Positions 1 to 25,879 of a DNA stretch of 64,000 nt are shown here, one piece after another (position 1 is the first letter of the stretch; each line of letters opens with the position of its first letter). The stretch spans positions 140,554,001 through 140,618,000 of the forward strand of contig NC_042999.1 in the NCBI RefSeq assembly GCF_006345805.1. The letters run 5' to 3'. The notes under the pieces are model-generated. The model searched no databases. It had not been told where the DNA came from and saw only the letters and a program-made list of their open reading frames with translations. The position numbers and the translations under genes are program-made. The stretch is from Octopus sinensis. Its lineage: Eukaryota.

Positions 1-472
1 AAAAGGTAAAGGTAAAGTTACCTTCTCGAGTCATACTGACTCACAAGGGCCAGTTTTCCAGTTTGATGGTGTATATATTCCCCACCTGACGGGATGCTGG
101 TCCATTGTAGGATTACTCATTTTTGCCAGCTCAGTGGACTGCAGCAACATGAAATGAAGTGTTTTGCTCAAGAACACAATGCATTGCATGGTCCAGGAAT
201 TGAAACCACAATCTTACAATCTGTTTCTTTATTACCCACAAGGGGCTAAACATAGGGGGGACAGACAAATGGATTAAGTTGATTACATTGACCCCAGTGC
301 GTAACTGGTACTTAATTTATCGACTCCGAAAGGATGAAAGGCAAAGTTGACCTTGGCGGAATTTGAACTCAGAATGTAATGGCAGACGAAATACGGCTAT
401 GCATTTCGCCTGGTGTGCTAACAATCTTACAATCATGAGTCAAACACCCTAACCATTAAGCTACATGCCTCC
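1..472 (-). mobile_element. tRNA-headed SINE interrupted by a second SINE
   Basis: Reverse strand: tRNA-like head gtggaggcatgtagcttaatggttagggtg, core ...cttgagcaaaacacttcatttcatgttgctgcagtccactgagctggcaaaaatgag (shared with 47580-47900), and (TTTACC)n tail. Confidence 0.75.
221..420 (-). mobile_element. SINE inserted into SINE, 13-bp TSD
   Basis: acaatcttacaat at 208-220 and 421-433; body homologous to the + copies at about 24620-24835 and 23165-23370. Confidence 0.8.
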
Positions 473-843
473 ACTAGATAGCAGTGGCCTGCAATTCTAG
501 CAGAGATGGATGGAATGTATCCATAAATCTTCTCTTCAGTGATCACATCATGGAATATTTGGAGCCCTCATATGAGGCCTAGGATTTGTATAATGAAATT
601 GATCTTGAAACACCTTTGTAGTTGAAATTTTAATTTCACAGTAAAGAATATTCTCTGCAAATGCCTTGAAGAAGGAAAACCTTGTTGACTTTGAAATACT
701 TGATCTATTGGCATACATAGGAGGGGCTGAAACTTCAAACTTACTGTCAACCCTCTTCTTACAAAAGTATAATATATATATACACACACACACCACATGT
801 ATGTATATATACACATATAGATGTGTATATATGTATATGTTTA

Positions 844-1060
844 TCATCATCATCATTCGTTGACCCCTTTTCCATGTAGCATGAGTTGGATGGTTCAACA
901 AAAACAGACAAACCAAAGGGCTGCATTAGTTACTAAGTTTACTTTGGCATGGTTTCTACAGCTGAATGCCCTTCCTAATGACAACTATTTAACAGAGTGT
1001 ATTGGGTGTATTTTATGTGGCATCAGCACTGGTGAGGTTGCCAAGTACCTGTAAGATTAG
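844..1060 (-). mobile_element. RTE LINE 3' tail fragment
   Basis: (CAT)n followed by ...ttccatgtagcatg...gctgaatgcccttcctaatg, matching the 3' UTR of the RTE copy ending at 44087. Confidence 0.7.
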
Positions 1061-1167
1061 ACCCCTCAAATGAGTTGGTTATTGAATGGAGGGATAAGAA
1101 ATTATGATAGAGGGTGAAGGAGAGCAGATGTGTTGCTGAAGAAGTGAATGCATGAGTTGCCCACTTG

Positions 1168-1215
<48 letters not shown>

Positions 1216-1889
1216 TGCAGTCCATGTACAAGGTGAATATTAAACATAAGATGATTAGAGATAGGGAATATGTTGGACACAGAGAGGGGAAGTGAAGGAT
1301 ATAGAAGACTGATGGAAGAGTAGGTGTTAAAAGATGAGTGGTTGAGGAAGGCTTGACAGAGCCTCAATTCTTGATACATGGATAGGTCTTCTCAAGCATG
1401 AAAAACATTATTATACATAAGTCACAGCAGGTGTCTATTCCAAAATGTAACTTTTGAGACCCATACACTTGCCCACTCAACCAAGTATGCATGGTTAGCT
1501 CAGTGGTATATGAAGCTGAGGTCACCTCAGTTCTACAAAATAACAAAACTCGAAAGGAAAAGTACACTGGCATATGTGAAAGTAACTTTAACAAAAAAAA
1601 ATGATATGCCAATCACCAGCACATAAACAAGAAGAAAACAACTAAGTTAACAAGCCATCAACAAAGAATCTTAGAGTGATTCATACCATAATGTTAATGG
1701 GTCATGGAGGTGCAGGCTTTGTAGAGTAGAAAGAATTTATATCCTTTTTAAATCTAAGAGTTCCACTGACATACTGAATTCTAGATCCAAGATTTTCACT
1801 AAATGAAACTACTTGACAAATTTCTATTATCAAACTGGCGAACACCACCCTCTCTGGATTAGGCATACAATCTCACAAACTTTAACCTT

Positions 1890-2640
1890 TCCCCTTGCAA
1901 AGTCTGGAGGAAGGGACAGAAACTTTGACCATGTGGGGCCTTCAAGACTGGCGAGTCTGATGCTATTATTATTTCATTTAAACTGTTGCAGGAAAGACAT
2001 AAGTAGGAGGTATAGTGATTCATGTAACAAGAAGCAAGGAAAAGAGTGGTTGGTCCCATCAAAGGGCTGCTGATAAGTGGACATACAATGTATGCCTGAG
2101 TGGTAGAAATACAAGACCAGCAAGCTCTGAGGAGTAAAGACCATTACTGTAGTGACAGAAAAGAGACATAGCCAGAAAGAGAGAAAAAGTCAATCAGCTG
2201 AGTAACCCATCTCAGAATGCAGTGTAAGATGTCTGTGTGCACAACAGCAGCACTATATCAGATGTAAGAGCAGTACTTCATTGTGAGCCTTACTTGAGCC
2301 TTGTAGTGACAGCAGATTTAGGGAGCTGAATTGTTTTCTGACCTTAATAAAGAAGACCTAGTCTTTGGGATGTAGTTCAAGCTGTACTAAGGATGTGTTT
2401 TCTTCAGGTGAGATCATTGGTAATAATAAGATTCAGCATTTGGAGTGACTGTGAAGGCTCAAGGTGAATGCTGTTTATGGCTTAGCAGGGAATTGGTGCA
2501 GTGGTGTTTACTTGATATAAGTAGTGCTTAAAGCTTTTTTGCAATTAAAATAGACAATGCTGGCATGGTTCCAGTGGAGGATGTTTCGGAGTTCACTGTT
2601 TATGGAGTCAAAGTAGATTTAGTAAGTAGTGTCTAACTGC
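1890..2640 (-). mobile_element. Decayed CR1/L2-like LINE, 3' part
   Basis: Reverse translation includes KAQVRLTMKYCSYI*, resembling the post-RT region of CR1/L2/Jockey-clade elements; similar to 59380-60010. Confidence 0.55.
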
Positions 2641-3519
2641 ATGTAAATGATGCATGATTAGAGAAGAATGAGGGGTTATGCTATCTATATAAGAGTGGTG
2701 TTGGATATTGTGGCAAAAAGTTTATTTTACAACCATGTGGTTTCAGGTTTATTCCCATTGTATGGCACCTTGGACAAGTGTTTTCTACTATAGCCCTAAG
2801 CTGAATAAAACCTTGCGTGTGGATTTTGTAGATGGAAACAGAAAGAAACCTATCATATCTGTGTATGTGTTTGTATATGTGTGTGTGTGTTTGCATATGT
2901 ATGCTTGCATCTTGTTGTTACACCATGCACATGTTGTAAGTAAATGTCACTGTAATAGATGCAGTGTTGTTTCTTTGCAAATTTCTGTAAAATATATCTG
3001 GCTACTGTAATGTTTGTGTTTGCAGAACTATGAGAAATGTTACTTTGCTTGGAAATAGGTAAGGGTTCATATCAGGAAGAGAATTTGGCTGTAGAAAACC
3101 TGCCTCAATGAATTTTATCTGATCCATGCAAGCATAGAAAAGTGAATACTAAGATTATGATGATGATTATTAAAAACAAACAAACAAACAAAAACAATAA
3201 AAAATTATGGTGAATATTATACATGATATATATATATATATATGCATGTATAAATTGTTACATTTGGTGATGGCCATTTTGCCAATAAGCACATGCAGTA
3301 TTTATTTGATCTTCACTTTAGCTTTATAATTATGATTAGTTTCTTTGTCAGAATTCTTTCATCAGACATTCTGTGACCTCTTCAATGACTATCTGTTTCA
3401 ATACACAATTTCACATCAAGAATCTTGCACTTGCAAAATAAATACACACACCTATATATATATATACTCTTTCCACATATCATCCTGAGATGCACTTGGA
3501 CACATCATCAGTAATGTTT

Positions 3520-4110
3520 CCTGGGGTCATAAGGTGTTTTGGGTCTTTCAACATGAGACATCCTAGCCTAGACGTCGCAACCAGGGTTGATCAAGCTCCA
3601 GCTTGTCTCCAGTTAGCACTGCCCCTTCCAGGGCTCAAAACAAATCCACACCCACCTTGAAGCAGCTTCTGCCACCTCTACAGACAACCTGATAGCCTTC
3701 TGGTCTCTGTAATGCCAAGCATTACAAACTATCTTTGTAGGGACTAGCCTACAAACCTTTGCCTCCCACCTCAATGGGATCACACATTTACCTGTCATTG
3801 CTTTGGCATAATTCCACTAGCTCAGTATATTTCCTCCTCTTGCACTTGTTAGCTTCCTCAATGTGGTCCTCAGGCAATGGAGAGTTTCAAGAGAACCACC
3901 TGCTTGGATGCTTCGGAGATCAACACCACATCCATCTTTAGTGATGTTGAAGCAGTGGTTTCTGGGAATTTCAGCACTTTTAGCTCCCAGACTTTTGCTG
4001 ATGCAAGTAGGCCTGAGGTGCTAGACATGGCAACAAGCACTTTCTCATCAAATTTGACAAAGGTGATGAGCTTCTTTGTTGGGTGGAAGTGTATGCAGTG
4101 AGTAATCTCA
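3520..4110 (-). mobile_element. Decayed RTE LINE internal fragment
   Basis: Stop-interrupted frames (EVAEAA; ITFVKFDEKVLVAMS) resembling the RTE endonuclease-RT linker. Confidence 0.55.
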
Positions 4111-5169
4111 CCTTCGATACACACACACACACATATATATGGATACATAGTTGTATATGTTTAGCAATTAAAGAAGATTGCATAACTAATAGATTTGCAG
4201 CAATATCAAATGGACGTGCCAATTTAAATATGGAATGGCACTTGCAAAATGAATTGAAGAAGTGAGGTGTACTTTTTGTTATCTTTATGCATTTCAATAA
4301 AGTACATAGAAAACTATAAAAAAAAAACTGGTGCAAGGGCAATAATTCAATATTTAAGACCTAAGAGTTATGCTTCCCGGTATAAAATATAATTAAATAG
4401 CCTAATTATGTAATTAAAGAAAGAAGGTAAGAAAGAATGCAAGGAAACAAGAAAGTAAAACAAAAACTATAAAAATTGCTGAATGAAAGAGGGCAAAGAA
4501 AGAAAGGAGGAAAGAAAGGAGGAAAGAAAGGAATGGAAGATAATGAAAAGATAGAGAGGTTAATGATGATAATAGAGACATTACTAATGGTGACCACCTC
4601 AAGTGAGTTTAGACCAGTACTTGAAAATGGTATTTCTTGTGTGCAAGCAACATGCAAATGTCTCGGATTTAGTATTCATATATATAGTTCAGGCGTTAGT
4701 GAATTCTTGGGAATTAGTCTCTTTTCTATTCAACAGTCTTCACCTTCTGCTGCAGTTGGAATAGGACTTGCATTTTTCTAATAATTTCCTAATATAATTT
4801 GCAGTTTTCTCACTTGGCTATTGTTGTGACAATCCATTTCTCATAGTTCCTGACTGAGGTAGTGATTGTGCATGTATTTTTTGACCAGAGATTTCATTAT
4901 TAAAATGTACTGTTCCACACTGGATGCCTTTACAAACTGTCTAGACCTGTCTTCAGTCTCATACACAACACACACAAATTGGTTCAAGGAGAGGAGAAAA
5001 CTGGTAGCACAAAAGGGGTAATGGAATATGTGCAATTCTGCTCTGCCATAGTTAGAAGGATGAAGGAGGGATGGGTGTTACAAAAATGAGTCATGAGGAA
5101 GGCTTGACAGGTACAGAGTGGGTGTGAGAAGTATGCATAGATATTAATGATATTCTTTTAGAATATAAT

Positions 5170-5500
5170 TTTTGGCTGAGCTGGATGGGTCTTCCCAAGC
5201 ATGGTGAATTGCTACTCATCTTGGTTCTTTGTCATCTCTATGAAGCTCAACAACTTGAGATTGGTCTTCAGTACTTTGTACTACACCTTCTTGAGCCTCC
5301 ATCTTCCACAAGTTCTCTTCATATATAGTGATCGGCACTTTTTTATGCAGGTGTCTTCATCCATACACATCACATGACCATACCAGGTGGTACTCTTGAG
5401 ATTATATAGCCAAGGTTTGACTTTGACTGCTTCAGTTTTCTTTCTTGTGTTACAAAGTTAACATGGCCACTTCACTGGCAGGGTACACCAAGGAAGAACA
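5170..5500 (-). mobile_element. Decayed RTE LINE C-terminal fragment
   Basis: Degenerate counterpart of the RLRWYGHVVRM...KKC...GTCGRGRP region seen at 53100-53393. Confidence 0.65.
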
Positions 5501-5569
5501 GACATCAGTGATCTGATTTTCCTGGTCTGAAGGTGTGTCAGGGGCTGAAATTCATTGCAGGTTTTCACT

Positions 5570-6590
5570 ACAATATGAGGAGAGTGCTTTACTGCATAGA
5601 AGTGTATATGAGTGGATCAAGAAGTTTAGAAAGTGGCCAGACATGCATGAAGCATGAAAGAGCAGAATGCCCATCAACTTCCATTACTGATGTGAAGATT
5701 CAACAAGCTTGAGAAATGGTTCTGGCAAACCAACAAGTGATAGTCAATGAGGAAGCATGTTCCTTGCAAATTAGAATGGTTCTGCATCATAAATAATCAA
5801 CAACAAGCTTTGTTTCTGAAAAGTCAGCATGAGATGGGTGCCAAAGAGCTTATTGAAGCTCAGAAGTACAATTGTGTAAAGATCTATCAATGCTTGCTTA
5901 ATCACTACAATGATGGAGGTGAAGCTTTTTTGGAGAGAATAGTCACAGAAGATGAGCCCTGGGTTCATCACTTTGAGCCAGAACCCAAAAGGTAGAGAAT
6001 GGAGTGGACACACCAGAAATCACTGGTGGAAAAGAAATTCAAGACTCAGTGATGTAAAAAGTGATGCAACCATTTTTGGGGATGCAAAAGGACTTAAACT
6101 GGAACATTACCAGGAAAAGTGGGGTCTACAGTCACCAATGTAGGCTACAGTGAAATGCTGGCCAACAAACTGAAACCAGCAACTTGTATCAAATGTTGAG
6201 GTCTATTATCAAATCAAGTTTTATTGTTGCACGACAAGCCACACTCACACCATTGAAACCATTGAAAAATTGGGTTTTGAGTTGCTGGAACATCTGCATA
6301 CACTCCAGATCTTGCCCATTCTGACTATTACTTCTTTGGACTGCTCAAAACATTCATTATGAGGTTGTTGATTTGCTATGGATAAAGAAGAACAGGAACC
6401 ATTGCATAAATGGCTGTGTGACCAACCAAAAAGCTTCTCTGATGGAATAAGCAAGCCTATGGACTGCTTGAAGAAGTGCATCAAAAAGCAAGGAGACTAT
6501 GTTGAAAAATGATATAATTGTTCAATCCTTGTTTTTGTTTTAACAAATTCCAGAAACAAGAGTGTGTATAAATTTTGACCTCATACATAT
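5570..6590 (+). mobile_element. Mariner (DD34D-type) transposase relic, frameshifted and 5'-truncated
   Basis: FLERIVTEDEPWVHHFEPEPKR (mariner IVTGDETWVHHYEPE motif) and HTPDLAHSDYYFFG (YSPDLAPSD motif); multiple stops and frameshifts. Confidence 0.88.
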
Positions 6591-6625
6591 AGGCATATAT
6601 ATTTGTATATACATATATACATACA

Positions 6626-7495
6626 TAGTGTGTAATGGGTAAATTGTCGCCATCTTTGTATTTTTCATTTCACACACACTCATTGTTGTTTTTGATTTTG
6701 TCAGCTACACAGAATTGTAGGGTCTGTTGGGCACCGTCTATGAGAAAAACAGCACCATGATGCAATTCACTCTGTCAGAAATTTGGAAACAATAAGCTGT
6801 ACTGCTTGGCATATGCACCAGAAGCTCCAATATGAACATTTCAGAGTGTTTGGGTGTCAGTCTGAGGACATGTACTGAAAGTGATTCAAATCAAACATCC
6901 AGACATCATGGTGTTTGGAGTGATCACTAGTGATGGCGATGTTATGCCTCCATTTATCTTCCCACATGGCCTCACACTCAACACGGAAGCCTACATCAAG
7001 TGCCTGGAGGAGGTAGTGCTTCCTTGGGTCAAGAGTGTGGCTACTGGAAGACCCTAAGTCTGGCAACAGGAATCTGCACCATGCCACACAAGCAGGAGAA
7101 CCCAGTCATGGCTGTCAGACAATTTCTGCGACCACATCACCCCTAACATCTGGCCACCTAACTCCCCAGACTACAACCCCCTTGATTATTATGTGTGGGG
7201 TGCAGTTGAGTGAGAGACCAACAAAATACCTTGTAACAGCAAAGATGAACTAAAGGCAAGGATTATGGCAGCATTCACCAACTTAAACAAGAAGACTGTC
7301 CAGAAAAGTTGCAGGAGATTCCGAAGTTCTCTGGAGGCCATGGTTGAAGCGAATGGCAATTTTATTGAATAAATTTACTCTTTAGTATTTCAAGATATAT
7401 TTATGGAATTTTGGTAAATATATCTGTTAAGATGAGATGTCAGTGTTATTTTCATTTTTGCGTAATTTAGATGACAGTTTATTCACTGCATCCTG
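6626..7495 (+). mobile_element. Non-autonomous maT (DD37D) Tc1/mariner-superfamily element
   Basis: MVFGVITSDGDVMPPFIF...QQESAPCHT...WPPNSPDYNPLDY with 37 residues between the second and third acidic positions; TA-flanked ends; in-frame stops. Confidence 0.88.
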
Positions 7496-7521
7496 TATAT
7501 ATCTCTGTGTGTGTGTGTGTA

Positions 7522-7537
7522 TGAGAGGAGAAGAGAG

Positions 7538-7610
<73 letters not shown>
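7522..7610. repeat. (GA)n microsatellite
   Basis: Direct reading; similar tracts at about 1170-1212, 11372-11403 and 35702-35775. Confidence 0.95.
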
Positions 7611-7615
<5 letters not shown>

Positions 7616-7797
7616 TGTCTAAGAGTCCATAAGTCAGGAAAAATTGCACTTGTATATCTGTCAGTAGAGTGGATATATTAATTTAAGTGTACAGTATTAT
7701 ATATCCATTGCAGCTGATCTTACCAATCAGTTTCACAATAGGGGTTCAACAGAGTGCCAGGTAACATTCTGATTATGTAACCCTGCACTTTTTAGAG

Positions 7798-8165
7798 CAG
7801 TGTTTCTCAACCTATTTTCCCCCTGGCCCCACTATAACTTTCCAGAAAAATGTATGCCCCACTGGTAGCATACATACAAAAGATTGATAATTTATCAACT
7901 TTTCATAATTATATACTTTCCTTAAAAAAATATCTACACTAGGGCATTAGGATAGCATTATACTGTAGTGAACAGTCTTCACACAGTATGCTTGGCTTGA
8001 GGGATTAGTTTGGCTAGGCTAAGCATAGGTGAAATATGTTTGTTGTGGATTTCAGAAGTCCATGTCACATAAAAAAAAAACAAAAAAAAAAAACGGGATC
8101 TCACACCCAACCACAATTTTCCCAGGCCCACCAGTGGGCTGTAAGCCTCACGTTGGGAAGCACTG
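7798..8165. mobile_element. hAT (Charlie-like) MITE
   Basis: TIRs CAGTGTTTCTCAAC / GTTGGGAAGCACTG; 8-bp flanks ttttagag / ctttagag (7 of 8 match). Confidence 0.8.
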
Positions 8166-8706
8166 CTTTAGAGATAGATATTATGGAATGAAATATGGTG
8201 ACTGTTCTCTATTGTTAGAGGTGAATAGGCACATCTGGTTTGTGGTTACAGTGAAAAAGATGATGAAGTGAATTGAGCAGGTGATTAAGTTAAGAGTAAT
8301 ATATATCAGGTCATCCCATAAGTTCTGTCTGATTTTACCTTTTTTAAAATTGAATGAAATTTAATAGTATTTTAGAATGTCTAATGGAATTAAAAATTAT
8401 TTTTATGCATTTGTGTACATTTAAACTACATTGTGAGAGAGTCTGTACTTGCTTATGACTACATAGGTACCTAAAACAATTACTGGAAGCATAGTTCCTG
8501 CCACCCTAACATAATTGGATGTGGTTTGGTTTTCATACATATATGGATAACAGGCTGCAGTATCACAATATAGATGGATGAAGTCTATGATGTCAAACTG
8601 AGTAAATATGGCCTTGCATTTATCGCTGCAATGTCAAAGTGCAAAGTTGGACGCTTTTCTAATGCTATTGTTGATATTCCTAAATGTATGTTTGCTATAC
8701 ATACAT

Positions 8707-8710
<4 letters not shown>

Positions 8711-8765
<55 letters not shown>
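8711..8765. repeat. (TA)n microsatellite
   Basis: Direct reading. Confidence 0.95.
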
Positions 8766-8771
<6 letters not shown>

Positions 8772-9746
8772 CACCATACACATGTGCAATTGTGTAATGT
8801 GCAAGTATGAATGAATTGATATGCTTCTTTTGAAACATAGCTTATTTCTTTTGTTCAATGTACATGCTTTTCCTTTTCAGTATCTACTCTTTAGATAATG
8901 CTACTTGAACAACTCACATTTCAAACCAGCATTATTAAACTATGCAGTGTAGTTTGGCAATTATTTTCCACCATGAAAATGTGATCAAAATGCTATTTGA
9001 TCATCTTTGAAATAATTTCAAGAGAAAAAAAAATACCTTTTTGAAAATAAAGAAAGCTGTTTTAATGAATAAATTTAATTTGAAGATCTTAGGAGAAATG
9101 AAGTGTTGAACATATTCAAAAAGCCAATTTCTTCTGATTTAATGAATATGCAGAGAAGAAAAAGAAACAAAATAATGTGATAAGTTATATTTACTTTTGA
9201 TTGAAAACTTGATGTGTTTGATTTTTAAATCATCAAGTTTAAAAAAAACCCAACAGCTTTTGACACCACCCTGTAAGTTTTACAAATTTTGAAAAATTCA
9301 AGTGAAATACTAAAACTAAACTTATCTTTTAAATATTTTTTACATTGTTTACATCTTGCTATCAGAGACGGAAACAGTATTATCATTATCAGCATCATTA
9401 GCACTAACAAAAACACAACAGTAGCAGCCAAATAGCAGAGGCATGTGGACATAGCCATGACTATTTCTAAAAGCAATAATATTGATAACAGCAGCAGCAA
9501 CAACATCAAGAGCAGTAATTTCAGCATATAATGCCTAGCAGTATATATACATACATATATATATATATGTATGTATATATATATATATTTACACACACAC
9601 ACACACACATATACATACACTCACACACACTCACACACACTCACACGTATGTATGCATGTATATAAAAGCACAACAAAACTGCAAAATACACATTAAATC
9701 AATGGAAGCAATAACCCAGTGGATTTATTTGAAACAGAAAACAAAC

Positions 9747-9758
9747 CTCTGAGTTTCG
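9747..9758 (-). CDS. Candidate 12-nt microexon (RNSE) in the IVS3-S4 linker intron of Cav1
   Basis: ttctttcttgttcatttacttatattctttgctctcag|CGA AAC TCA GAG|gtttgt; long pyrimidine tract, TGC just before the acceptor, phase 0 compatible, no stop. Prediction only. Confidence 0.4.
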
Positions 9759-11367
9759 CTGAGAGCAAAGAATATAAGTAAATGAACAAGAAAGAATTCA
9801 TTAGATATTACATACTTCAGTTAGAGAAAAACTGAGAAAAAATAAAAATAAATGAAAAAAATTAAAAAGAAAGAAAAAACATGCAATGTAAATAAGAAAG
9901 GCACAAAAATTAACATAAAATTGTGCAGAAAAAGAAGATTAACTTGGTAGCATAAAATACAGTGATAGTATTTTTATAAAATATAGTGTGTAAAATATAA
10001 TCCTGGTGAGTTTCATCTCATAAAGAACTGTGTTGTTTGGTTTGGTCTTAGGTTATTAAGAAACTAAACATGTCATGGTAGCAGTAAACAGAAAAACTGT
10101 GCACTAATATGTTTACTTATTTAGCTGACATTAGTATAGATATTTTTAAGGATATCCTCTGTTTATAATTTCACGGTGTTATGCCTTAGACTGAATACAG
10201 TGAATGCAATTTTCTAAATTTTTTCTTTATTACTAAAGTTCAAATTGATTGTCAAAATTATGTTTGCTTCTAATCACATTTTACATAATTTGATAAAATC
10301 TACTTATCTAATTACCTCTTAAAATGTTTTAAGTTATATTATCAGTGCCTAACTTACTTTGATAAAGAAGAATTGGCTTTACTCAAAGTAAGATAGAGGT
10401 GTAAACTCTGTGAAGGTATCATTTCTAATAGCAGTGGAAAGGAATCTGGCTATGATTTAGTGAGCAATATCTATTCAATCTATTTCAAGATATTTACTTA
10501 TGTTACATTAAATCTAATAATTTTAATGGAATATATTCCATTTAAAGTATTAGTTATGTAAATAAAAAGTGATGGTGTAGCAGACTTCTGAAATCTTGCT
10601 GCTAATGAAATCAGTTAAAAGAATCAGTCTCAAGAAAGTAAGTATTAGTTCTTTTTCCTAACCAAATGTATCTTTCAATGGGTGATTATTCCTGTTGACA
10701 TCAGAAGAGTGTTTCTCTATGCTGTACCTATGGTAGGATTTTGAGCTTGATATTGCACCTTCATCATGGAACCTATTTTCAGTAAAGTGAAGAATGAGCC
10801 AGTGAAAGTTAAAAATTGTAAAACTTTCAGCTAATAGATATCTTGTTGACACTCAGTTTCAACAATTTAGTTTAGTGATATAGAAAATTAATTAAAAATT
10901 TATGGCACTGGCATTAACTATAATCATGTCATAAATTACAAAACTTAACTGCTTAACTTTAGATTGCAACTTTAAATAAATAGGGTAGGAGGGAAATACT
11001 TCACTAACTAGAAAGCTAATAGAGCACCTGGAAATTTTCCACAAATGTTTTGCTGCTACTCCTCCAATAGACAAACACAGGTGCCTGGAGGCATGTGAAT
11101 GAAATAGTTGATATATCTCTTATTTCATAGAACCAAAAAGGTATTCTAATTTTTACTTTTATACTACACAATGTTTATAAAATTGTTAAGGAATATTATT
11201 ACTATCATTATTATTACTACTACCCAACAGTTTACTCACCTATCATACTTTAATTGTAATGGTATGTCTAGTGTAGCACCCTGCATATTTTAATAGATGT
11301 CTTCAGTTGCAATTATTTATTTACATTCTCTAACAGAATTTTAATTTAAAGAAATTAGTGAGTGTGT

Positions 11368-11408
<41 letters not shown>

Positions 11409-14400
11409 CCTTCATAAGGTTATTCAAAGCATAACCTGGTTCCATGATGCACTGCAGAGAAAGGTCATTGTTATGAACTGTAAGAAGGCAAAGATCATGC
11501 AAATATTTGAATTTGCTCAAACAACCAATCCATATGAGTTTATAAAATAAAAAAACCAAATGGGGCATGAAAATAAACATATCAATGAACACATACACAA
11601 AAAGTATGTAAATTTTTAATCATTAGCATGCAGTAACCTACTGATTGATAAAATTTTTTAACAAGTAAAATGTTTTCGGAGAAAGTCATTATTCAAATGA
11701 TCTCTGACATAAGAGAACCTTATGGCTATAGGAACTACCCACATTTTTCTGATAGCAAAAAGAGATTGAGAAGATATCTGTTGTGATATTACAGTGCTAA
11801 ATGATGTTTGCATGATGCTGTTTAACAATGTTATATATCTATTCCTCATCCACCTTATTCTCTTGACCTTGCTCCTTCAGACTACTATTTGTTCATCAAG
11901 TTGTCATACTATTTAGAAATTACTATACTTTGGTTATTGCTATAAAAAAAGTGATATATTGTTTAGAACAGTGATGATTTTGTTTATTTGATTTTGATAG
12001 TGTTTACCAAGGTATGTAATATTTTAATGGTCTAACATAGCATGACACATTACTTATTAGGATGAAAACAGATTTTATAAAAATGGCACAGCTTAATAAC
12101 TTATATATTATTTCAACAGTATGACATGGATAAAGGTGGCGTAATATAAAATAAAAACATGATTTGTTAGAATTTTTATCAGTACTGATAGCTGAGTTTA
12201 CCATGTGTGGTTCAAAGTACTGACAGCTTAATTTGGAGCTAACAATAAACAACTGATAATAATTATTAAATACACAATACATCTTAATTTGATAAATTCA
12301 GTTGTAGGGTAATACTCACTTTATTGAAGTGATAATTAGTAAGGTGATATATTATTTAACAAATTGACATATAATCTAATGGAGGTGATGTTGCATTTGT
12401 TACTGTAAAGTAGATTATATGAAGTGAGATATACTTTGTCAAGATAATGTAGAATTGGAAAATGCATTATATTAATTGGATGATCTGGAATTTAGCAGGG
12501 TGATAAAAATGTTTAGTAAATAAGCTAATAACAAGTGATGTTTTGTTTAGAGAGTAGGAGGTTTAGTGTTATTCTCTTGATATTAAAACCTGCTGGATGA
12601 AACAAAATATAATAAAAAAATTCAGACAGCTCAATAGCAAATGATATGGCACCAGGGCAGCATACACAAGTCTCTAAGACAACAGTTCAGTTCTCCAGAA
12701 ATAAAATTGAAAATCTAAAACAACAATAACAATAGCAAATAAATGGATAGCAGAAATAGTTCATATTGTCACATAAATAAACAATCACATGGAAAATAGC
12801 AATGTCAATACTTATTTTCCAAATTTATATTGAAAATTAAAAAAGAATTTAAAAAATGAACATAACTAATATATAAATACCTAACTAGGTTAATAATTAG
12901 ATGAATAAATAAAAAATAAAATCATATGTGTGTGCATGTAGGTGTATGTGATATAATAATACACACACACACATATATATTATATAAGTATTATATACAT
13001 ATAAATATTATATATGTATCATATGTATATATAAATTATACATATATATATTATATTATTCTTCTTAATTATGATCTTATACATGTGCTTTATGTAATCA
13101 AGTAATGTTACTAGTAACATGTAATCCAGTGCAACCAGTAGCCTGGTTGGTTCACTGGCAGCTAAACTGGCTTCATCATGGTAAGGAGAATTACTGTAAA
13201 CCTAGTAAGATAGAAACTACATGTCAAAAGAGTGGATAGATCCAGCATAGAATCAACTATTTGGCAAGAGCACAAGGACTCAGAAATTCTGGATTGGTCT
13301 TCATTGCACTTCTTAGCTTCTGTTGAAGCATATCTCCAAGTAGAAAATATCTTGCAGGAAACTGCATTGGCTGTGTTGGTGGGAGTCTTTAGCATTAGCT
13401 AAAGATTATGACTCTCACATTCCTGAATCTGTGACTGTTATTAGTACCAAATATCTTGTTCAGGCTTTTCTCTGGATCATACCAATAGGGTGAAAAATTT
13501 TTATGAGGTATTGTGCAAGCCTTATTAAAATTCTGCATGGGCATTGCTGACATCAGTACTCTTTTTTTAAAAGGCTGTTTTTATTTTAATTTTCTTATGG
13601 TAATGGGAAGATGGCAATGTGTGCAGACATGATGGATTGGAAGCACACAGTCACTGACTTATATATAGATAGCCTATGTCTGTCAGTGATGATCTTCCTT
13701 GGACATTGGTGGACAGTCATCATATATGTATATATGAGAAAAGGAGAAAAAGGCTATGCATATATAAAAAATGCGAAGAAAAAGAAAACAGTTAGCAGCA
13801 TTTATGAAGGGAAAGGGAGAGCAATGAGAAGTACAATTTGAAAAAAAAAAAACTAAAACTCTATGCATTTATGTGAATATACATGCATATTCATATATAC
13901 CATATGTGTGTGTTATGAACTGAACTAAATTGAACTGATTTATTCAAACTAAATTGATAAAAATACTCACAAGATAATATATAAATACCAACAACATATA
14001 AAACACAAAATAACAACAGTAAACAAACAACATAACTAAAAAGTTCCCCTTCACTATAAAACAAAAAGTGATGTTGAAGAAAATATCACTGTGTGAAAAA
14101 TCTCCTTTTACAGCTGCAAACAGTGAATCAGAAAATATGATTTAATATATCAAATACCGTTGGTTTCTTTTGTATAATTTTTATCCTTTTTTTTTGTTTG
14201 AACAACTGAAAGTGTCAATTTTTAAACAAAAGAAGAGAGAAAAAAAACAAAAATCCTCCAAAATGCATTTCTTGTAATATTGAAATAAGTTAAATGCTGA
14301 TCCAATATTTAATTTCTATGTTGTAGCAGGAGCAGATAAAATACAGAACAATTTCTCATTAATTAGTGTCGCTGAAACTGAGTGAGGAACACAAAATATT

Positions 14401-14971
14401 AATGCTTAAGATCAATGAGAAGAGCAGCCATGCTAAGAATGCAAGCAAAGTTTTCCCGTAAGTCTTTGAAGAAGATAGAACAGATTCAGCAAAATTTAAA
14501 CAGAACCAACAACATTTTGTTTTGTATTTAATTTCAGTTTTCTCAAAAACACTGTATATATTCAATCTTTGGGTCATAAGTAGAGCAGCATTCATTTGAG
14601 ATCAGGTACAGGAATAGTCTTGTTATGAAATATTTTGGGATTAAAATTAAACGAAAGAAAACCCCCCAGAAATTTAAAACTAAAATATAAAAAAAAAGCA
14701 GTAACAACAATAACAAATTAAGTATAAAATTAAATTAATTTAATACAGTTGACAAAGAAACTTCATGCAACAATGATGCTATTGCCTTAGAATTGAAAGA
14801 TATATAAAAATCACTGTGTATTTGTATTCTAAAGTAGATTGTAATTCTAAAGGAATATTCTTCAGATTCTGTTAACAAAAATGAAACTTGTGACTGTTAG
14901 TTCTCTAAAGAGAAAGACAACTATATATACATAACAGATAGATAGATAGATAAGATAGAACAGATACTCAC

Positions 14972-15055
14972 ATTAACTTCTGTATAAATGATATCAATGA
15001 AACTTCCTAAAACAATAATGAAATCAAAAACGTTCCAGGCATCACCAAAATAGTT
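14972..15055 (-). CDS. Cav1: Cav1 exon, IVS3 (84 nt)
   Basis: ctacag|AAC TAT TTT...GTT AAT|gtgagt; [28 protein letters not shown]. Confidence 0.98.
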
Positions 15056-17429: not shown

Positions 17430-17540
17430 CTTAAATCTAAAAGCAGCCAACTTGAGCATAAATTCCACAGTAAAGAGTCCAGTGAAAATCATATTAAGAT
17501 AATCCAGCACATTTGAGTAACCTTCATTTTCACCATCATA
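17430..17540 (-). CDS. Cav1: Cav1 exon, IVS2 (111 nt)
   Basis: tttcag|TAT GAT GGT...TTT AAG|gtaaac; YDGENEGYSNVLDYLNMIFTGLFTVEFMLKLAAFRFK. Confidence 0.97.
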
Positions 17541-18907
17541 CTGAAATTAGAAAACAATTTATAAACTGTAGTGGTAAACAATGATTCAAGTGTAGCGCTG
17601 TTCTGTTTTATAAGATGTTTTTATTTACTTATTGGTTATATTAATATAGATGAATAACAAAAGTGAAGAAAAAAAGCAACTCTGCTGAAAAAACAGAAAT
17701 AATAAATTTACTTGATATTTTTAGTTTTCATCACTCCTAAATGTGTAATGAAAAGTCTTTTATTATAGAGAAATATGTTGGATAACATAAAAAATTAATT
17801 ATGTATTTCTACATGGCTTATATTCAAATATATTTGATAAATCTAGAAATGAATAACTGCAGATAATATTGAAAGTAGCTTGTACTTAAAATAAGCTTAT
17901 AAAAATTTATTGTTTTACCAGAAAAAAACTAATCATTCAGCTATGGTAGTAGTTAAATAATATTCTTAAGCCTGCAATTTACTCATGCACAGCATCTTTC
18001 ACTGTTTGTCACTAATTTAGTTCTTAACCAAATGGAAAACCATTAACAGTTTTGAGGAGGACTGGTCCCTAGCTACATTTTGGCATTAAAAAATTGAGAT
18101 TTGGTCCAGTAGAAAAAAGTTTACATCAAAATTTGTAGCAATGTTATTGGAGAGTAAGTAACACCACCAATCAAGTTTAAATCTAAATAACTTTTTTATT
18201 CTCAATGATAGAAGAAAGCGTGAAGAATTTCATAGTTTTGGTCCCATGCAACAAATATTTGTATCAAAAACGTTTTGAGGTAAAATATCATGAAAAAGAA
18301 TATAAGGCAAAAATTGGATTTAAATATAATTAACTTTTTTATTTTAAAAACAAACTATATTTTAATTAAACTTAAATGATAGAGCTCAATTCGAGGAATT
18401 TCATCGTATCTGTCTCATGCAATGAAGTTTAGAAAGAAAAAAGTTATGAGTGTTTGTTTCTCAAATTTGAGGGTGATAATATAGTTCTATACTTTTTAAT
18501 GAATATAGTTCTAGGGGACTTTTAATATGTCACTGGCATCATTGAGGTAAAGAAAAAATTATCAACAACCCACTAATTGACACATTATTAATTAGCATAA
18601 TAGCATAGCCTGGAAAAAACATGGATTGATGTCTTGGAAGATTTTGTAGATGGTGACTATGAATTCAAGATATAAGTTGATTTCATCCTTTGTTCTCTGA
18701 TAATATTTTCCAGTGATCTTGAGCAACTTTAGGCAAGATTCTATTGTTTGTTGTAGGATCTTAGTCACCTCTAATATAATTCATTTACCTCTGTCCTCCA
18801 GTCTAAGAATGATGATCTAATTAAAACTATTAGCATCGACTATAAACAATCAATAAATAAAAGTGAATTTTAATGGCAATGGTGAAAAAAAATTCTCAAT
18901 AGCTTAC

Positions 18908-19066
18908 CTTCATTGCAAGTGTGATTGTATTTATCATAATGAGAGCAAATACTGCATATTCAAATGGTTGTGATGTAACAAACCACCACACTTTATACTG
19001 CCAGCGAGCTTTTGGGATGTACCGACGGGCAGGTTTAACTTTTAAAGCAAATTCAATACATTTCCT
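18908..19066 (-). CDS. Cav1: Cav1 exon, III-IV linker and IVS1 (159 nt)
   Basis: ttccag|AGG AAA TGT...ATG AAG|gtaagc; [53 protein letters not shown] (not in the ORF track). Confidence 0.98.
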
Positions 19067-19269
19067 CTGGAAGGAAAATAAATGATAAATAAAAAATTAA
19101 GAATATAAAAGAGAGGTGCATATGCATCAATAAATTATGATATAAGTTAGGTTCTCTTTACTAAATAATTTTGGGTCTCAAGATTTTGTTTGTCAAATGT
19201 AATAATATAACTGGAAACACAAAGCCTACATGAAAATTGTTTCATAATCTAGTGTATATAAATCACAGT

Positions 19270-19700
19270 ATGTGTGTGCATAACACATACATTTCCACAA
19301 TTCTCAACAGATTTTTACCAAACTTTACATGTGCATTACTTATGTCCCAAAGATGATTGTACACTATAACATTTTGCCTAAAGCTCCCGCGTAAATAGAC
19401 ACAGTTTTTGGTATGTGGGGTCTTCCATACATTCCATAAAAGTGAAAGAATTTTGTCTATTTATTTATTTTGACTGCCAATGTGCAACAGTAACACAATA
19501 TGTGTTATGCCTCCAGTAATTTTCTTTCATATAAATAAATGTTTATATTAATTTAAGATTTATCCAAAAAATCTTATTTAGCTGTTATTTTTAGCACAAC
19601 ACATGAGTGAAGGTAAAAAATGCGCACATCTGGTGGTTAGGGTTAGGGCTATGATGAAAACGGATGGTGTGCGTATTCTTTACTTCTGCCCAACAGTGCA
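19270..19700. mobile_element. Possible Helentron/DINE-like non-autonomous element
   Basis: ttctcaacagatttttaccaaacttt motif and short ggttagggttaggg (19635-19648), resembling such families from memory; boundaries uncertain. Confidence 0.35.
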
Positions 19701-21279
19701 TTCTTATGCATTCATGCAGTGCATATCCCTCTGTGCATTATGCAATTGCCCTTTATGTTTTCCTCTATATAATTGTATGATTGCATTGTTTGTGTTCAGG
19801 TCTATAGCCATAAAAGCGTGTGCATATGGGTTTATGCATGTAGTTGTGTATTTCAGGTGCAGCCGCGCAAGTGTATTTTTACCAGTGCATTTGAATGTAT
19901 TTATGTATTGTTTATACTTCATGGGCATAGGTGTTTTATGTACTGGTTGTACACACATTTACACACACATATATACATGTGTGTGTATATTCATGTGCTC
20001 ATATGAGTATTTTTTAAATCTTGCTCCAGCTTTCATATGTTTACCTCTCTCCTTTCTGACTCTCCCATACCACACATCATCTCCCTATTTCTTATCTGTC
20101 TACAATTATATGATACTGCTGCTCTACACTCTTACTGTACTGCCACTTACACCTCTTCCTTCTTGAACCACTCCTATTTCTTTTGCCAAACCACTCCAAC
20201 CTGATATTTACTTCAGCCACATTTCCATACTTATTCATAATCCACTACATTTACTTCTACTTCTGTCTCTAATCACCTGCAACTCTCCTCTCAGACTCTT
20301 ACAAACTCATCTACTGATCCTTAATCCTATTCCTTCTTATACATTGAGAGTATGCTCTGACAACTCATCATCATCTTCACCTCTACTTCCAGGTACTCCC
20401 ATTTATAATGCAGCGTAGGAAATGTATCTCCTCTATTGCAAGACAGTAGGGTTAATCTAAAGATAAACCTCTTGATTCCAAGTTTTGCAATCATACCTGG
20501 AATTTTTCTCTAATTTCTCTATAGATTCAACAAATAGTATAATAAAGGAACAAATTTCATGTTTAATTAGGGTATCATTAATAACTCTTATGTTGATTAC
20601 TCTTGTAGTCAGATTAGTAGATTGAAGCTCACGAGTACAAAAAAAACAACAATTACTAAATAAACCAACAATATATCAACTTTCAAGAAATACAACTTAT
20701 ATTAGAGTGTATTTTAGATGAGAAAAAAACTAGATATGAGATTAGTCCACAACTTGATTATGATTTTCAGTGGAAGATATGAATACTGCAGATTCTAATT
20801 TCTCTTCCTTTATAAATCTGTAGCTATATACCAATGTGAGAAATTAGTTGTATAATAACAAATTGATCTTGCACAAACCCACACATGCATACTAATAAAT
20901 AGAATAATGAAAAAGAAAATTGATAGAATATTTGGTGTAAAACAGTTAACAGTGAAAACCTATCAATGAGCCAGCAAGGTAAGTTCATTACATAACTGAC
21001 TGACTTGAATAATGTAGTAGCCAAATCTTGATCAATACACACTCTAAACTAGGACTTTAAATTAAGACTACATGTTTTAAGACTTAAGAGTTAGGATACA
21101 ATAAAAGGAAGCTAACCATAGTTTGAACACAGATGTTTGACCCTTGCATATCAAGTAGCAAAGGCATGTAACTGGATCTTTGGGTTTTGCATAAGCATTT
21201 GAATCTAATACTACCTAAGATCTGCTCATGTAGAGAAGGTCTGGAGGTAGAAGTTAGTCAATAACAAACAACAACATAC

Positions 21280-21481
21280 CTGATTTTTGTCAAGTTCGCA
21301 ATTTTTGTATTCTTGCTCTCCCTCGTTCTGGAATGTGACGATCACAAAACCAACGAAGATGTTAACCATAAAGAATGCAATGACGATGATGTAAACAAAA
21401 TAGAAAATAGCTACTACAGGACGATTGTCATAAACCGGTCCCATACCTTCTAGATGGGAATCGATTGAAATGTACAAAAGG
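21280..21481 (-). CDS. Cav1: Cav1 exon, IIIS6 and start of III-IV linker (202 nt)
   Basis: tttcag|C CTT TTG...AAT CAG|gtatgt; [67 protein letters not shown]. Confidence 0.98.
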
Positions 21482-22186
21482 CTGAAAAGATAAGAGAAAA
21501 CAGTTCAATACTTCAAAAGAAGCTCAAATTTGAAATCAAATATTAAATTCTTCTTCCAGTTTTCAAATAAATATATACAACTTTTGTTAAAAATAGATCT
21601 TATTCCCACTCTGATGTGATCTCACACTCACTGTTTTACTTGAAGATGAATTAACAAATTAATTTTCAGTGATCTGTGTGCAACAAACCATTATGTAAAT
21701 ATAATACATAATCTTTTTATCATATACAATGCTGTGCAAAGAACTTAGCTTTTCATACACATGCTGTCATTAATATAACAGATGTACAATGTATACATGT
21801 GTGTGTGCATGTACACAAGTGCATGTGTGTGTATATGTGCATACATCCACACATAGACTATCAGCATGCTTGTCATAGAACATTGTGTTCACCAAATATT
21901 TATGAGTTATTCACAAACTTTGTACTGCATCTTTTTTTTTTCATGGTAGTGAAGGCTAAGATGGTTTACTTAATTAGAAAATAAAAGTTTGCTTATGTAT
22001 TACATTTATTTATGACACTCAGATTGGTCTTAGTCAACTACTTGTAGCATGTAAAAATTTAAACATATTTTTAGCACATTTTAGTTCTGAACTTGCATTT
22101 TTTCATGCTAGAATATCTTTATTTATGTGTGTATACACAACAAAGAAATACAAAATTAGTATGTTTAGAGGTAGAAAAGTTTTGAT

Positions 22187-22670
22187 CATCATCATCATCA
22201 TTGTTTAACATCCACTTTCCATGCTGACATGGGTTGGACAGTTTGACTGGGGACTGGTGAGCCAGATAGCTGCACCAGGCTCCAATCTGATCTGGCAGAG
22301 TTTCTACAGCTGGATACCCTTCCTAACGCCAACCACTCCGAGAGTGTAGTGGGTGCCTTTATGTGCCACCAGCATGAGGGCCAGTCAGGCAGTACTGGCA
22401 ACAGCCACACTCAAATGGTGTTTTTACATGTCACCTGCACAGGAACCAGTCCAGTGGCACTGGCAACGCCCTTGCTTGAATGTTGTTTTTCACGTACCAC
22501 CGGCACAAGTGCCAGTAAGGCGATGCTGGTAACGATCACACTTGAATGGTGCTTTTTACGTGCCACCGGCACAGGGGCCAGTCAATGGCTCTGACAATGA
22601 TCACACTCGGATGGTGCCCTTAGCACTCCACTAGCATGGGTGCCAGTCATGCAGTGCTGTCATCGAATTT
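22187..22670 (-). mobile_element. RTE LINE 3' UTR fragment with about 5 internal ~65-nt tandem units
   Basis: (CAT)n-gtttaacatccactttccatgc...; repeated ggtgctttttacgtgccaccggcac core. Confidence 0.85.
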
Positions 22671-23164
22671 GAATAAAAATAACTTGTGAGATTTTTTAGG
22701 TTGATTAGATTAATATATGATTAATTAACATTAATTTCTATTTACAGACAATAGAAAGAGCAGAAAGTTTTATCATATACTTATATTCTTTCCAACTTTG
22801 TTATGGAATTATTTTGAATATTATCTTTGTATTGAGTATATATAAATATATAATATATTTTTAAAGATTTACTTTTTCTTTCCAAATTTACAACTTAAGA
22901 ACTATTTGGAAGACCAAGAATCTTCATATTTCTAATTGTGCATACTTTTGTATAGTTGCATGTCCTAGATGAGGTTGTCTAGCTATGCTTATCTTTGCAG
23001 TAGTTTTGCTGACATGTGTACATAAGGACTACAGTATCTGAATTTGGAGCAAAGGTTTTACAAAAAAATTATTTTTTTATCGTCATAGCTTCTTTCCTCA
23101 CTGACTATGACAGTTTTTAATTAAAAAAGTAAAAAATGTTGTTGTTGCTGTTATGATGATGATG

Positions 23165-25845: not shown

Positions 25846-25879
<34 letters not shown>

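What the first reader, a model, noticed from the sequence alone, without database searches (positions are those of the whole stretch)
9747..9758. Candidate neural-type 12-nt microexon (RNSE) in the repeat IV S3-S4 linker of Cav1
Seen: on the minus strand, a ~40-nt pyrimidine-rich tract ending ...attctttgctctcag, then CGA AAC TCA GAG, then gtttgt. It is 12 nt, phase 0 like the upstream IVS3 exon, and stop-free. There is a TGC 6-8 nt before the acceptor, branch-like ctctaac and tatctaat about 50-70 nt upstream, a TGCATG at 9880-9885, and TG-repeats about 90 nt downstream. Established: SRRM3/4 (eMIC)-dependent neural microexons typically have UGC near the 3' splice site, and short cassette exons in the IVS3-S4 loop tune gating in vertebrate Cav1.2 (exon 33) and Cav2.1/2.2 (NP/ET dipeptides). 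Inference: it would give ...YTEVN-RNSE-[IVS4 exon], an independently evolved voltage-sensor tuning insert. The GTTTGT donor is sub-optimal, so chance occurrence is possible.
Basis: partly seen in the sequence, partly recalled or inferred. Interest (0 to 1): 0.72.

Follow-up and report, generated by a model that had tools for sequence, protein, structure and literature searches.

The report
Unproven 12-nt pseudo-exon in Cav1 intron
The 12-base AG...GT segment is in the sequence as described, deep in a long intron of an L-type calcium-channel gene, but similar look-alikes arise by chance about as often as seen here and no RNA or cross-species evidence could be obtained, so it is most likely an unused pseudo-exon.

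Summary
The gene is a Cav1 (L-type) channel. Seven exons (28240-14972) splice into one open 288-aa frame ending ...IIYTEVN in phase 0.

The IVS4 exon is not in the window. The intron after IVS3 is at least 14,971 nt, and the candidate lies 5.2 kb into it.

The acceptor side fits the architecture of eMIC/SRRM-dependent microexons well: a 54-nt AG-free zone, a CTAAT branch site 41 nt upstream, 80% pyrimidines, and UGC at -9 to -7. Only 4 of about 7,400 AG sites in the window share this combination.

The donor GAG|GTTTGT is weaker than all seven real donors by position-weight scoring.

Candidates at least as good on both sites occur 5 more times in the 128 kb of the two strands. They also appear in 12-27% of Markov shuffles of the intron.

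No cephalopod transcript, protein or orthologous intron was reachable, so inclusion and conservation are untested.

Best reading: a chance pseudo-exon (about 0.8). A real neural microexon remains possible (about 0.12).

The parts
9747..9758 (-). Candidate 12-nt segment CGAAACTCAGAG (R-N-S-E in phase 0)
   Evidence: Read directly. It ranks third of 315 in-frame AG..GT segments of 3-30 nt in the visible intron, and second of four when lengths up to 150 nt are allowed with score floors. GC is 50% against about 30% locally, but 22% of intron 12-mers reach that.
9759..9814 (-). Putative 3' splice-site region: a 54-nt AG-free zone (9814-9761), CTAAT branch-like site 9804-9800 (branch A 41 nt from the AG), pyrimidine tract about 9797-9761, TGC 9767-9765, CTCTC, and acceptor AG 9760-9759
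   Evidence: Only 4 of about 7,400 AG sites in the window combine an AG-free zone of at least 40 nt, CTAAY, a nearby TGC and at least 72% pyrimidines. The acceptor position-weight score of 4.55 lies within the range of the seven real acceptors (-3.9 to 11.8).
9741..9746 (-). Putative donor GTTTGT (context GAG|GTTTGT)
   Evidence: The position-weight score of 1.1 is below all seven real donors (3.3-7.8), which all have A or G at +3. The U1 duplex energy is -5.8 kcal/mol against -5.2 to -9.5 for the real donors. 7.6% of the 802 GT sites in the intron do as well or better.
9816..9831 (-). Neighbouring frame-breaking decoy: ctcag|TTTTTCTCTAACTGAA|gtatgt (16 nt, contains an in-frame TGA).
   Evidence: It shows how dense splice-like motifs are in this T-rich tract. 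A branch at CTAAC would meet the AG at 9816-9815 first, not the candidate's AG.
9880..9885 (-). TGCATG (Rbfox-type hexamer) about 120 nt upstream of the acceptor
   Evidence: There are 37 copies on the sense strand of the window and 10 in this intron part, or 0.5-0.6 per kb, so it is uninformative.
9542..9646 (.). Microsatellites (TA)n 9542-9588 and (AC)n/(TG)n 9591-9646, about 100-200 nt downstream of the candidate on the sense strand
   Evidence: Tandem Repeats Finder and repeat families D1/D2.
14972..15055 (-). Cav1 IVS3 exon (84 nt, [28 protein letters not shown]), acceptor ctacag|, donor |gtgagt, ends in phase 0
   Evidence: The amino-acid sequence is identical in L037.
1..14971 (-). Visible part of the IVS3-to-IVS4 intron. 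It runs off the window, and no IVS4 exon or second IVS3 exon is present.
   Evidence: Motif search in six frames and tblastn with relatives that include IVS4.
17430..29564 (-). Upstream Cav1 exons: IIIS4 29564-29477, IIIS5 28240-28133, loop 26704-26652, III pore 23945-23799, IIIS6 21481-21280, IVS1 19066-18908, IVS2 17540-17430
   Evidence: tblastn and boundaries read from sequence. The seven exons from 28240 to 14972 join into 864 nt with no stop.

Best explanation
The 12 nt are most likely a chance pseudo-exon: ordinary deep-intronic sequence in the long, AT-rich, T-rich intron between the IVS3 and IVS4 exons of a Cav1 gene. A pyrimidine-rich stretch ending in AG happens to lie 12 nt before a GT. 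On this reading the segment is not, or only negligibly, included in mRNA. The channel's IVS3-S4 linker would then be encoded, as in other invertebrates, by the first few codons of the IVS4 exon, which lies outside the window.

Shown: the sequence, the exon map, the weak donor and the background frequency of equivalent look-alikes.

Inferred: non-use, because no RNA data could be consulted.
For: 1. Frequency.
- There are 315 in-frame, stop-free AG-(3..30)-GT segments in the visible intron.
- Five further sites in the 2 x 64 kb of the window equal or beat the candidate on both splice-site scores. That density predicts about 0.6 such sites per 15 kb.
- 12% (order-1) to 27% (order-3) of Markov shuffles of the intron contain at least one.

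2. Donor.
- GAG|GTTTGT has T at +3 and +4.
- It scores below all seven verified donors of the same gene, which all have A or G at +3.
- It sits at the weak end of the real donors for U1 pairing.
- Vertebrate SRRM3/4-dependent microexons are described as having strong 5' splice sites.

3. The supporting motifs are common here.
- TGCATG occurs at 0.5-0.6 per kb.
- TG and TA microsatellites are frequent in the window.
- A frame-breaking AG-16 nt-GTATGT decoy lies 58 nt upstream in the same T-rich tract.
- An unrelated 12-nt in-frame AG..GT (cccag|GTGGTGCAAAGC|gtgaac) lies in the same intron of locus L037.

4. Comparative transcripts. All 14 intact invertebrate Cav1 and Cav2 transcripts read across the junction go from the conserved IVS3 end into the linker and IVS4, and none carries an RNSE-like insert. 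The same holds for the proteins that reach IVS4.

5. Selection.
Against: - The acceptor side is unusually well formed. It has a 54-nt AG-free zone, CTAAT 41 nt upstream, 80% pyrimidines, CTCTC, and UGC at -9 to -7. Only 4 of about 7,400 AG sites in the window show this combination, and it matches published eMIC-dependent architecture.
- In Drosophila, eMIC-dependent exons have weak 5' splice sites, so the weak donor does not disqualify it in a protostome.
- The location is a recognised site of cassette exons in vertebrate Cav1, and linker length varies among arthropod Cav1 sequences.
- Within this intron part no other in-frame candidate beats it on both sites.
- The segment lies outside every repeat family detectable within the window.
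- No RNA data were examined, so non-use is not demonstrated.
Confidence: 0.8

Rival explanations
1. It is a real, neuron-enriched 12-nt cassette microexon. Srrm234 (eMIC domain) bound at the UGC/UCUC element between the branch site and the AG would recruit early spliceosome components and allow definition of an exon too short for normal exon definition. Inclusion would insert R-N-S-E after ...YTEVN, lengthen the extracellular IVS3-S4 linker of voltage sensor IV, and shift activation voltage or kinetics. This would parallel vertebrate Cav1 exons 29/33/32.
For: - The acceptor architecture matches the published code: long AG-free zone, CUAAY branch site, long pyrimidine tract with UCUC, and UGC close to the AG. 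This combination is rare in the window, at 4 of about 7,400 AG sites.
- The segment is 12 nt, stop-free, and in phase with a phase-0 intron whose position is conserved.
- Fly eMIC-dependent exons have weak 5' splice sites, and the fly eMIC programme is enriched in voltage-gated calcium-channel subunits.
- The linker is alternatively spliced in all four vertebrate Cav1 genes, with gating effects.
- Linker length varies among arthropod Cav1 proteins.
Against: - There is no transcript or conservation evidence of any kind.
- The donor is weaker than every verified donor in the gene.
- The overall pattern is expected by chance in roughly 12-45% of introns of this size.
- Fly eMIC-dependent exons sit in short introns, whereas this site has 5.2 kb upstream and at least 9.7 kb downstream.
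- The feature set used was chosen after seeing the candidate, which inflates its apparent rarity.
Confidence: 0.12
2. It is a cryptic or decoy exon used only at noise level or kept silent. The well-formed 3' splice site may engage U2AF/U2 without productive inclusion. The nearby long UG repeat could bind a UG-repeat-binding repressor of the TDP-43 type, known from vertebrates to silence deep-intronic cryptic exons. That last point rests on my own knowledge and was not tested here.
For: - A good acceptor is paired with a poor donor.
- The (TG)n tract at 9646-9591 lies about 100 nt downstream.
- The site is deep in the intron, 5.2 kb from the nearest exon.
Against: TG and TA microsatellites are common throughout the window, so their proximity is unremarkable. 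There are no RNA data. Inclusion would be in-frame, so it would not be a 'poison' exon.
Confidence: 0.06
3. It is a recursive splice site or recursive exon that helps remove the very long intron in steps.
For: The intron is long (at least 15 kb) in a neural gene, and a well-formed internal 3' splice site is present.
Against: Recursive sites need a 5' splice site regenerated at the junction (AG|GT...). Here the AG is followed by CGAAAC, so joining ...GTTAAT to CGAAAC regenerates no GT.
Confidence: 0.01

Closest known systems
Vertebrate Cav1 IVS3-S4 linker cassette exons (exon 29 of Cav1.1, exon 33 of Cav1.2, exon 32 of Cav1.3 and Cav1.4)
   Same: The candidate lies in the same intron, between the IVS3 and IVS4 exons, after the conserved ...EVN codon in phase 0. 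If included it would lengthen the same extracellular linker, whose length and flexibility shift activation voltage and kinetics (PMC5279877).
   Different: The vertebrate cassettes are demonstrated in mRNA and are longer than 12 nt. From my own knowledge they are 33-57 nt. The candidate has no RNA support, and RNSE shows no evident similarity to them. Any relation would be convergence, not homology.
eMIC (Srrm234/SRRM3/SRRM4)-dependent neural microexons
   Same: The candidate is 12 nt and in-frame. It has UGC close to the AG, a UCUC-containing pyrimidine tract, a long AG-free zone and a CUAAY branch site at 41 nt.
   Different: Neural inclusion, eMIC dependence and flanking-intron conservation are all untested. 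The donor is weak, unlike vertebrate microexons. The flanking introns are very long, unlike fly eMIC-dependent exons.
Cav2.1/Cav2.2 IVS3-S4 dipeptide microexons (NP/ET, 6 nt)
   Same: This rests on established knowledge and was not re-examined here.
   Different: They occur in a different channel subfamily, with a different size and sequence. Those exons are documented in transcripts.
Deep-intronic pseudo-exons (decoy splice-site pairs)
   Same: The AG and GT pair has plausible but sub-optimal signals, lies kilobases from real exons in a long intron, and occurs at a frequency matching background expectation. A comparable decoy lies 58 nt upstream.
   Different: The acceptor-side motif combination is better than most decoys in the window.

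Membership tests
eMIC/SRRM-dependent neural microexon | Exon length 3-27 nt that preserves the reading frame | tested here: met
   The segment is 12 nt with no stop and follows a phase-0 exon end. The downstream phase is inferred from the conserved phase-0 intron in L015, L016, L020 and L002, because the IVS4 exon is outside the window.
eMIC/SRRM-dependent neural microexon | UGC motif between the branch point or pyrimidine tract and the AG, with a UCUC-rich tract, a long AG-free zone and a distant strong branch site | tested here: met
   TGC lies at -9 to -7, CTCTC is present, the AG-free zone is 54 nt, and CTAAT has its branch A 41 nt from the AG.
eMIC/SRRM-dependent neural microexon | 5' splice-site strength (strong in vertebrates, weak in Drosophila) | tested here: inconclusive
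   GAG|GTTTGT is weaker than all seven real donors by position-weight score. By U1 pairing it falls within their range but at the weak end. This fails the vertebrate pattern and fits the fly pattern. The rule in cephalopods is unknown.
eMIC/SRRM-dependent neural microexon | Inclusion in mRNA, enriched in neural tissue, and dependent on the eMIC domain | not testable with these tools
   No RNA-seq is accessible. No cephalopod transcripts are in the protein or contig collections.
eMIC/SRRM-dependent neural microexon | Conservation of the exon and its flanking intron in related species | not testable with these tools
   No cephalopod genomic sequence was reachable. The best related loci are 75-83% identical at the protein level and non-cephalopod. 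The first 1 kb of the L037 intron shows no counterpart.
Cav1 IVS3-S4 linker cassette exon | Located in the intron between the IVS3 and IVS4 exons of a Cav1 gene | tested here: met
   Cav1 identity rests. The candidate lies 5.2 kb downstream of the IVS3 exon with no IVS4 exon before it.
Cav1 IVS3-S4 linker cassette exon | Presence of the insert in some mature transcripts or proteins | not testable with these tools
   None of the invertebrate Cav1 sequences retrieved carries RNSE after EVN, but none is from a cephalopod.
Recursive splice site / recursive exon | A 3' splice site immediately followed by a regenerated 5' splice site (AG|GTRAGT) | tested here: not met
   The AG is followed by CGAAAC.

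The most novel reading that the evidence does not exclude
The 12 nt are a genuine neuron-specific, Srrm234/eMIC-dependent microexon. It would insert R-N-S-E into the IVS3-S4 linker of a cephalopod L-type calcium channel. That would be an independently evolved counterpart of the vertebrate Cav1 exon 29/32/33 cassettes and the Cav2 NP/ET microexons, tuning voltage sensor IV.
Probability: 0.12. Interest if true: 0.5.

Novelty: not a real feature. Interest (0 to 1): 0.15.

Why it matters
If the exon were real, it would show convergent use of one small extracellular loop of voltage sensor IV as a splicing-controlled gating element in molluscs and vertebrates. It would also add a concrete ion-channel target to the little-known lophotrochozoan microexon programme. 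Such a target could be tested by electrophysiology of channels with and without RNSE.

As the evidence stands, the value is mainly cautionary. In long, T-rich introns, in-frame AG...GT pairs with respectable acceptor motifs arise at about the observed rate. Sequence inspection alone cannot nominate microexons.

Tried and rejected
1. I looked for the IVS4 exon, or a mutually exclusive second IVS3 exon, in the window. Neither is present.

2. I searched the 5.8-billion-protein collection with the spliced IIIS6-IVS3 peptide for cephalopod transcripts carrying or lacking RNSE. The best identity was 81%, all hits were shorter than 330 aa, and none was cephalopod.

3. Exact-sequence look-ups of three window ORFs were run to find contigs of the same or sister species: two versions of the ORF over the IIIS6 exon, and the 131-aa ORF beside the candidate. 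None is on record.

4. The metagenome and metatranscriptome scan gave 80 loci.
- They were useful for the conserved phase-0 intron and the typical 5-8-residue linkers (PGxNI-ISINFF).
- None was cephalopod.
- L037 has an identical IVS3 peptide, but it is a GC-richer, non-octopus genome. Only 1 kb of its intron was retrieved, with no counterpart to the candidate.

5. Literature searches found nothing on cephalopod Cav1 linker splicing.
- Searches on octopus microexons, invertebrate IVS3-S4 splicing and cephalopod L-type splice variants gave no relevant paper.
- The peptide strings IIYTEVN, TEVNRNSE and GSFIDIIY gave no hits.
- A 2026 preprint uses Octopus bimaculoides RNA-seq. Its text does not mention calcium channels, and no supplementary files are held.

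6. A transposable-element or repeat origin was checked. The candidate region has no other copy in the window.

7. A structured-RNA explanation was checked. There are no Rfam hits in the window.

8. A recursive splice site was rejected because there is no AG|GT.

9. I considered a second 13-CPU-hour protein search with a hypothetical RNSE-containing junction. I dropped it because the first search showed that no close relatives are in the collection.

Full report
**Observation**

On the minus strand the window reads ...gaattctttcttgttcatttacttatattctttgctctcag|CGAAACTCAGAG|gtttgttttctg....
- The acceptor AG is at 9760-9759, the 12 nt are at 9758-9747, and the GT is at 9746-9745.
  - TGC at 9767-9765
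  - CTAAC at 9824-9820
  - CTAAT at 9804-9800
  - TGCATG at 9885-9880
  - a (TG)n tract at 9646-9591, followed by (TA)n at 9588-9542
- The coordinates and the literal description are therefore correct.

**Gene context**

Six-frame translation and tblastn with relatives place eight exons of a four-domain calcium channel on the minus strand.

| Exon | Window coordinates |
|---|---|
| IIIS4 | 29564-29477 |
| IIIS5 | 28240-28133 |
| loop (53 nt) | 26704-26652 |
| III pore | 23945-23799 |
| IIIS6 | 21481-21280 |
| IVS1 | 19066-18908 |
| IVS2 | 17540-17430 |
| IVS3 | 15055-14972 |

- The seven exons from 28240 to 14972 all have AG/GT borders. They join into 864 nt (288 aa) without a stop, ending ...[10 protein letters not shown] in phase 0.
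- The closest proteins are named L-type alpha-1D or muscle alpha-1 channels at 75-81% identity.
- Cav2-like loci are only 48-51% identical, so the Cav1 assignment holds.
- I could not verify that the genome is a cephalopod.

**What is missing**

- No IVS4 exon (the highly conserved ...FFRLFRVMRLVKLL...) exists anywhere in the window, and there is no second IVS3-like exon.
- The intron after IVS3 is therefore at least 14,971 nt and leaves the window. The candidate sits 5.2 kb into it.
- The phase argument is nevertheless reasonable. In four genomic loci of other invertebrates (L015, L016, L020, L002) the intron lies at the same codon boundary, and the next exon starts with a whole codon (PSGKNIISINFF, PEGKNLISINFF, ATGGPPVGISINFF, PGSSIISISFF).
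- L037 encodes an identical IVS3 peptide followed by gtaagt at the same place.

**Splice signals**

The position-weight matrices I used were built from textbook frequencies recalled from memory, so the scores are crude.

Acceptor side:
- The candidate scores 4.55, inside the range of the seven verified acceptors (-3.9 to 11.8).
- It also has a 54-nt AG-free zone, a CTAAT whose branch A is 41 nt from the AG, 80% pyrimidines, CTCTC and a TGC at -9 to -7.
- Only 4 of about 7,400 AG dinucleotides on the two strands of the window have this combination.
- These are the features reported for eMIC/SRRM-dependent microexons:
  - long AG exclusion zones, UGC close to the 3' splice site, long UCUC-rich pyrimidine tracts and strong CUAAY branch sites (PMC8797185)
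  - a UCU_CUC...UGC element with a long branch-point-to-AG distance (bioRxiv 10.1101/2024.09.17.613571)

Donor side:
- GAG|GTTTGT scores 1.1, below all seven real donors (3.3-7.8), every one of which has A or G at +3.
- Its predicted pairing with the U1 5' end is -5.8 kcal/mol, against -5.2 to -9.5 for the real donors.
- 7.6% of the 802 GT sites in this intron part pair as well or better.
- A weak donor contradicts the vertebrate microexon pattern but not the Drosophila pattern.

**Is it more than chance?**

- The visible intron holds 315 in-frame, stop-free AG-(3..30 nt)-GT segments, 24 of them exactly 12 nt. The candidate ranks third by summed score, and none beats it on both sites.
- When lengths up to 150 nt are allowed, with acceptor score at least 2 and donor score at least 1, it ranks second of four. 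It falls behind a 57-nt segment at 11084-11028.
- Across the whole window, five other sites (three sense, two antisense) equal or beat it on both scores. That density predicts about 0.6 per 15 kb.
- Order-1 and order-3 Markov shuffles of the intron contain at least one such site in 12% and 27% of trials.
- The extra motifs add little:
  - TGCATG occurs 0.5-0.6 times per kb.
  - 22% of intron 12-mers are at least 50% GC.
  - TG and TA microsatellites recur through the window.
- Just 58 nt upstream, in the same T-rich tract, lies a frame-breaking decoy, ctcag|TTTTTCTCTAACTGAA|gtatgt, with a better donor.
- The same intron of L037 holds an unrelated 12-nt in-frame AG..GT segment.
- The rarity figure is inflated, because I chose the feature set after seeing the candidate.
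- Overall, a look-alike of this quality is expected in roughly one in eight to nearly one in two introns of this size.

**Evidence from elsewhere**

The decisive data are junction reads and cross-cephalopod conservation, and neither could be obtained.
- The protein collection returned no relative above 81% identity.
- Three exact-ORF look-ups were empty.
- Literature searches found no study of cephalopod Cav1 linker splicing, and no text contains the peptide strings.
- A 2026 preprint analyses Octopus bimaculoides tissue RNA-seq. Its text does not mention calcium channels, and no supplementary files are held.

Comparative data do give context.
- Invertebrate Cav1 transcripts usually run ...(E/D)VN-PG(T/G/S/N)(N/D)(I/M)-IS(I/V)(N/S)FFRLFR, a 5-6-residue linker encoded by the IVS4 exon.
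- Some arthropod sequences have 12-15-residue linkers (P0005, P0022).
- All four vertebrate Cav1 genes carry a cassette exon here that alters activation (PMC5279877).
- The position is therefore a plausible place for a cassette exon, but nothing ties these particular 12 nt to one.

**Other explanations examined**

- The region is not part of any repeat family detectable inside the window, and no Rfam family matches anywhere in the window.
- It is not a recursive splice site, because the AG is followed by CG rather than GT.
- A silent or noise-level cryptic exon remains possible. It might be repressed through the downstream UG repeat by a TDP-43-like factor. That idea comes from my own knowledge and is untested.

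**Verdict**

- Weighing the a-priori plausibility of a linker cassette and the good acceptor against the weak donor, the chance rate and the selection effect gives these estimates:
  - about 0.8 that this is an unused pseudo-exon
  - about 0.12 that it is a genuine neural microexon
  - the remainder for a cryptic, noise-level exon
- Interest is low unless RNA evidence appears. If the exon were confirmed, it would be a modestly interesting case of convergent voltage-sensor tuning.

Noticed in passing
window 22185-22582, 43772-44085 (inverted), 48618-48922, 49610-49832, 52647-52899, 60763-61144: An interspersed repeat family of about 250-400 nt has at least six copies at 72-83% identity, all inside introns or flanks of the channel gene. 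Translated copies share strings such as APTTLSEWLALGRASSCRNSARSDWSLVQ. Pfam found nothing in two copies.
   Followed up: partly
window 6609-7499 and 55366-56196; 43313-44242 and 52442-53397 (inverted): There are two longer dispersed repeat pairs: 894 nt at 80% identity and about 1 kb at 69% identity. They are probably transposable-element remnants. The ORF at 53103-53579 ends in a ...GRPRKTWDEVVKNDLRSLGL... string reminiscent of LINE C-termini (my recollection), but it has no Pfam hit.
   Followed up: partly
window 61975-61980, minus strand: A 6-nt segment has much stronger splice-like signals than the reported candidate: cttcctttctttgtccaaccag|CCCCAG|gtgaga, with acceptor score 5.75 and donor score 8.07. 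It lies more than 32 kb upstream of the IIIS4 exon. No exon was recognised between 29,600 and 64,000, so its intron and phase are unknown.
   Followed up: no
window 11028-11084, minus strand: A 57-nt in-frame, stop-free AG..GT segment (APVFVYWRSSSKTFVENFQ, ctccag|...CAG|gtgctc) lies in the same intron. It was the only candidate that outscored the 12-nt one once longer lengths were allowed. The peptide is hydrophobic and unlike known linkers, so it is probably chance.
   Followed up: no
window 27967-27978, minus strand: This is the second sense-strand site with the same eMIC-like acceptor combination: an 88-nt AG-free zone, CTAAY and TGC at -9. It is followed by in-frame GTs after 3 and 12 nt (GCA / GCAGTTATATGT) in the phase-0 intron after the IIIS5 exon. 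The donors are poor.
   Followed up: no
window 29600-64000: No IIIS1-S3 exons were detected upstream of the IIIS4 exon at E <= 1e-3. Either the preceding intron exceeds about 34 kb or the exons are too short or divergent for tblastn with 65%-identical queries.
   Followed up: partly
L037 5352-5435 (contig JAAUXT010080915.1): A metagenome-derived eukaryotic contig of about 48% GC encodes an IVS3 peptide identical to the window's ([27 protein letters not shown]), with the same intron position. Its IVS1-IVS2 region is 83% identical. It is likely another lophotrochozoan host genome, and the rest of its 55-kb contig was not retrievable.
   Followed up: partly
result list: All 120 listed relatives are shorter than 330 aa, and no full-length Cav1 from any model organism appears. 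The word-indexed protein search seems not to return long channel proteins for this query, which limits what absence from it can mean.
   Followed up: no
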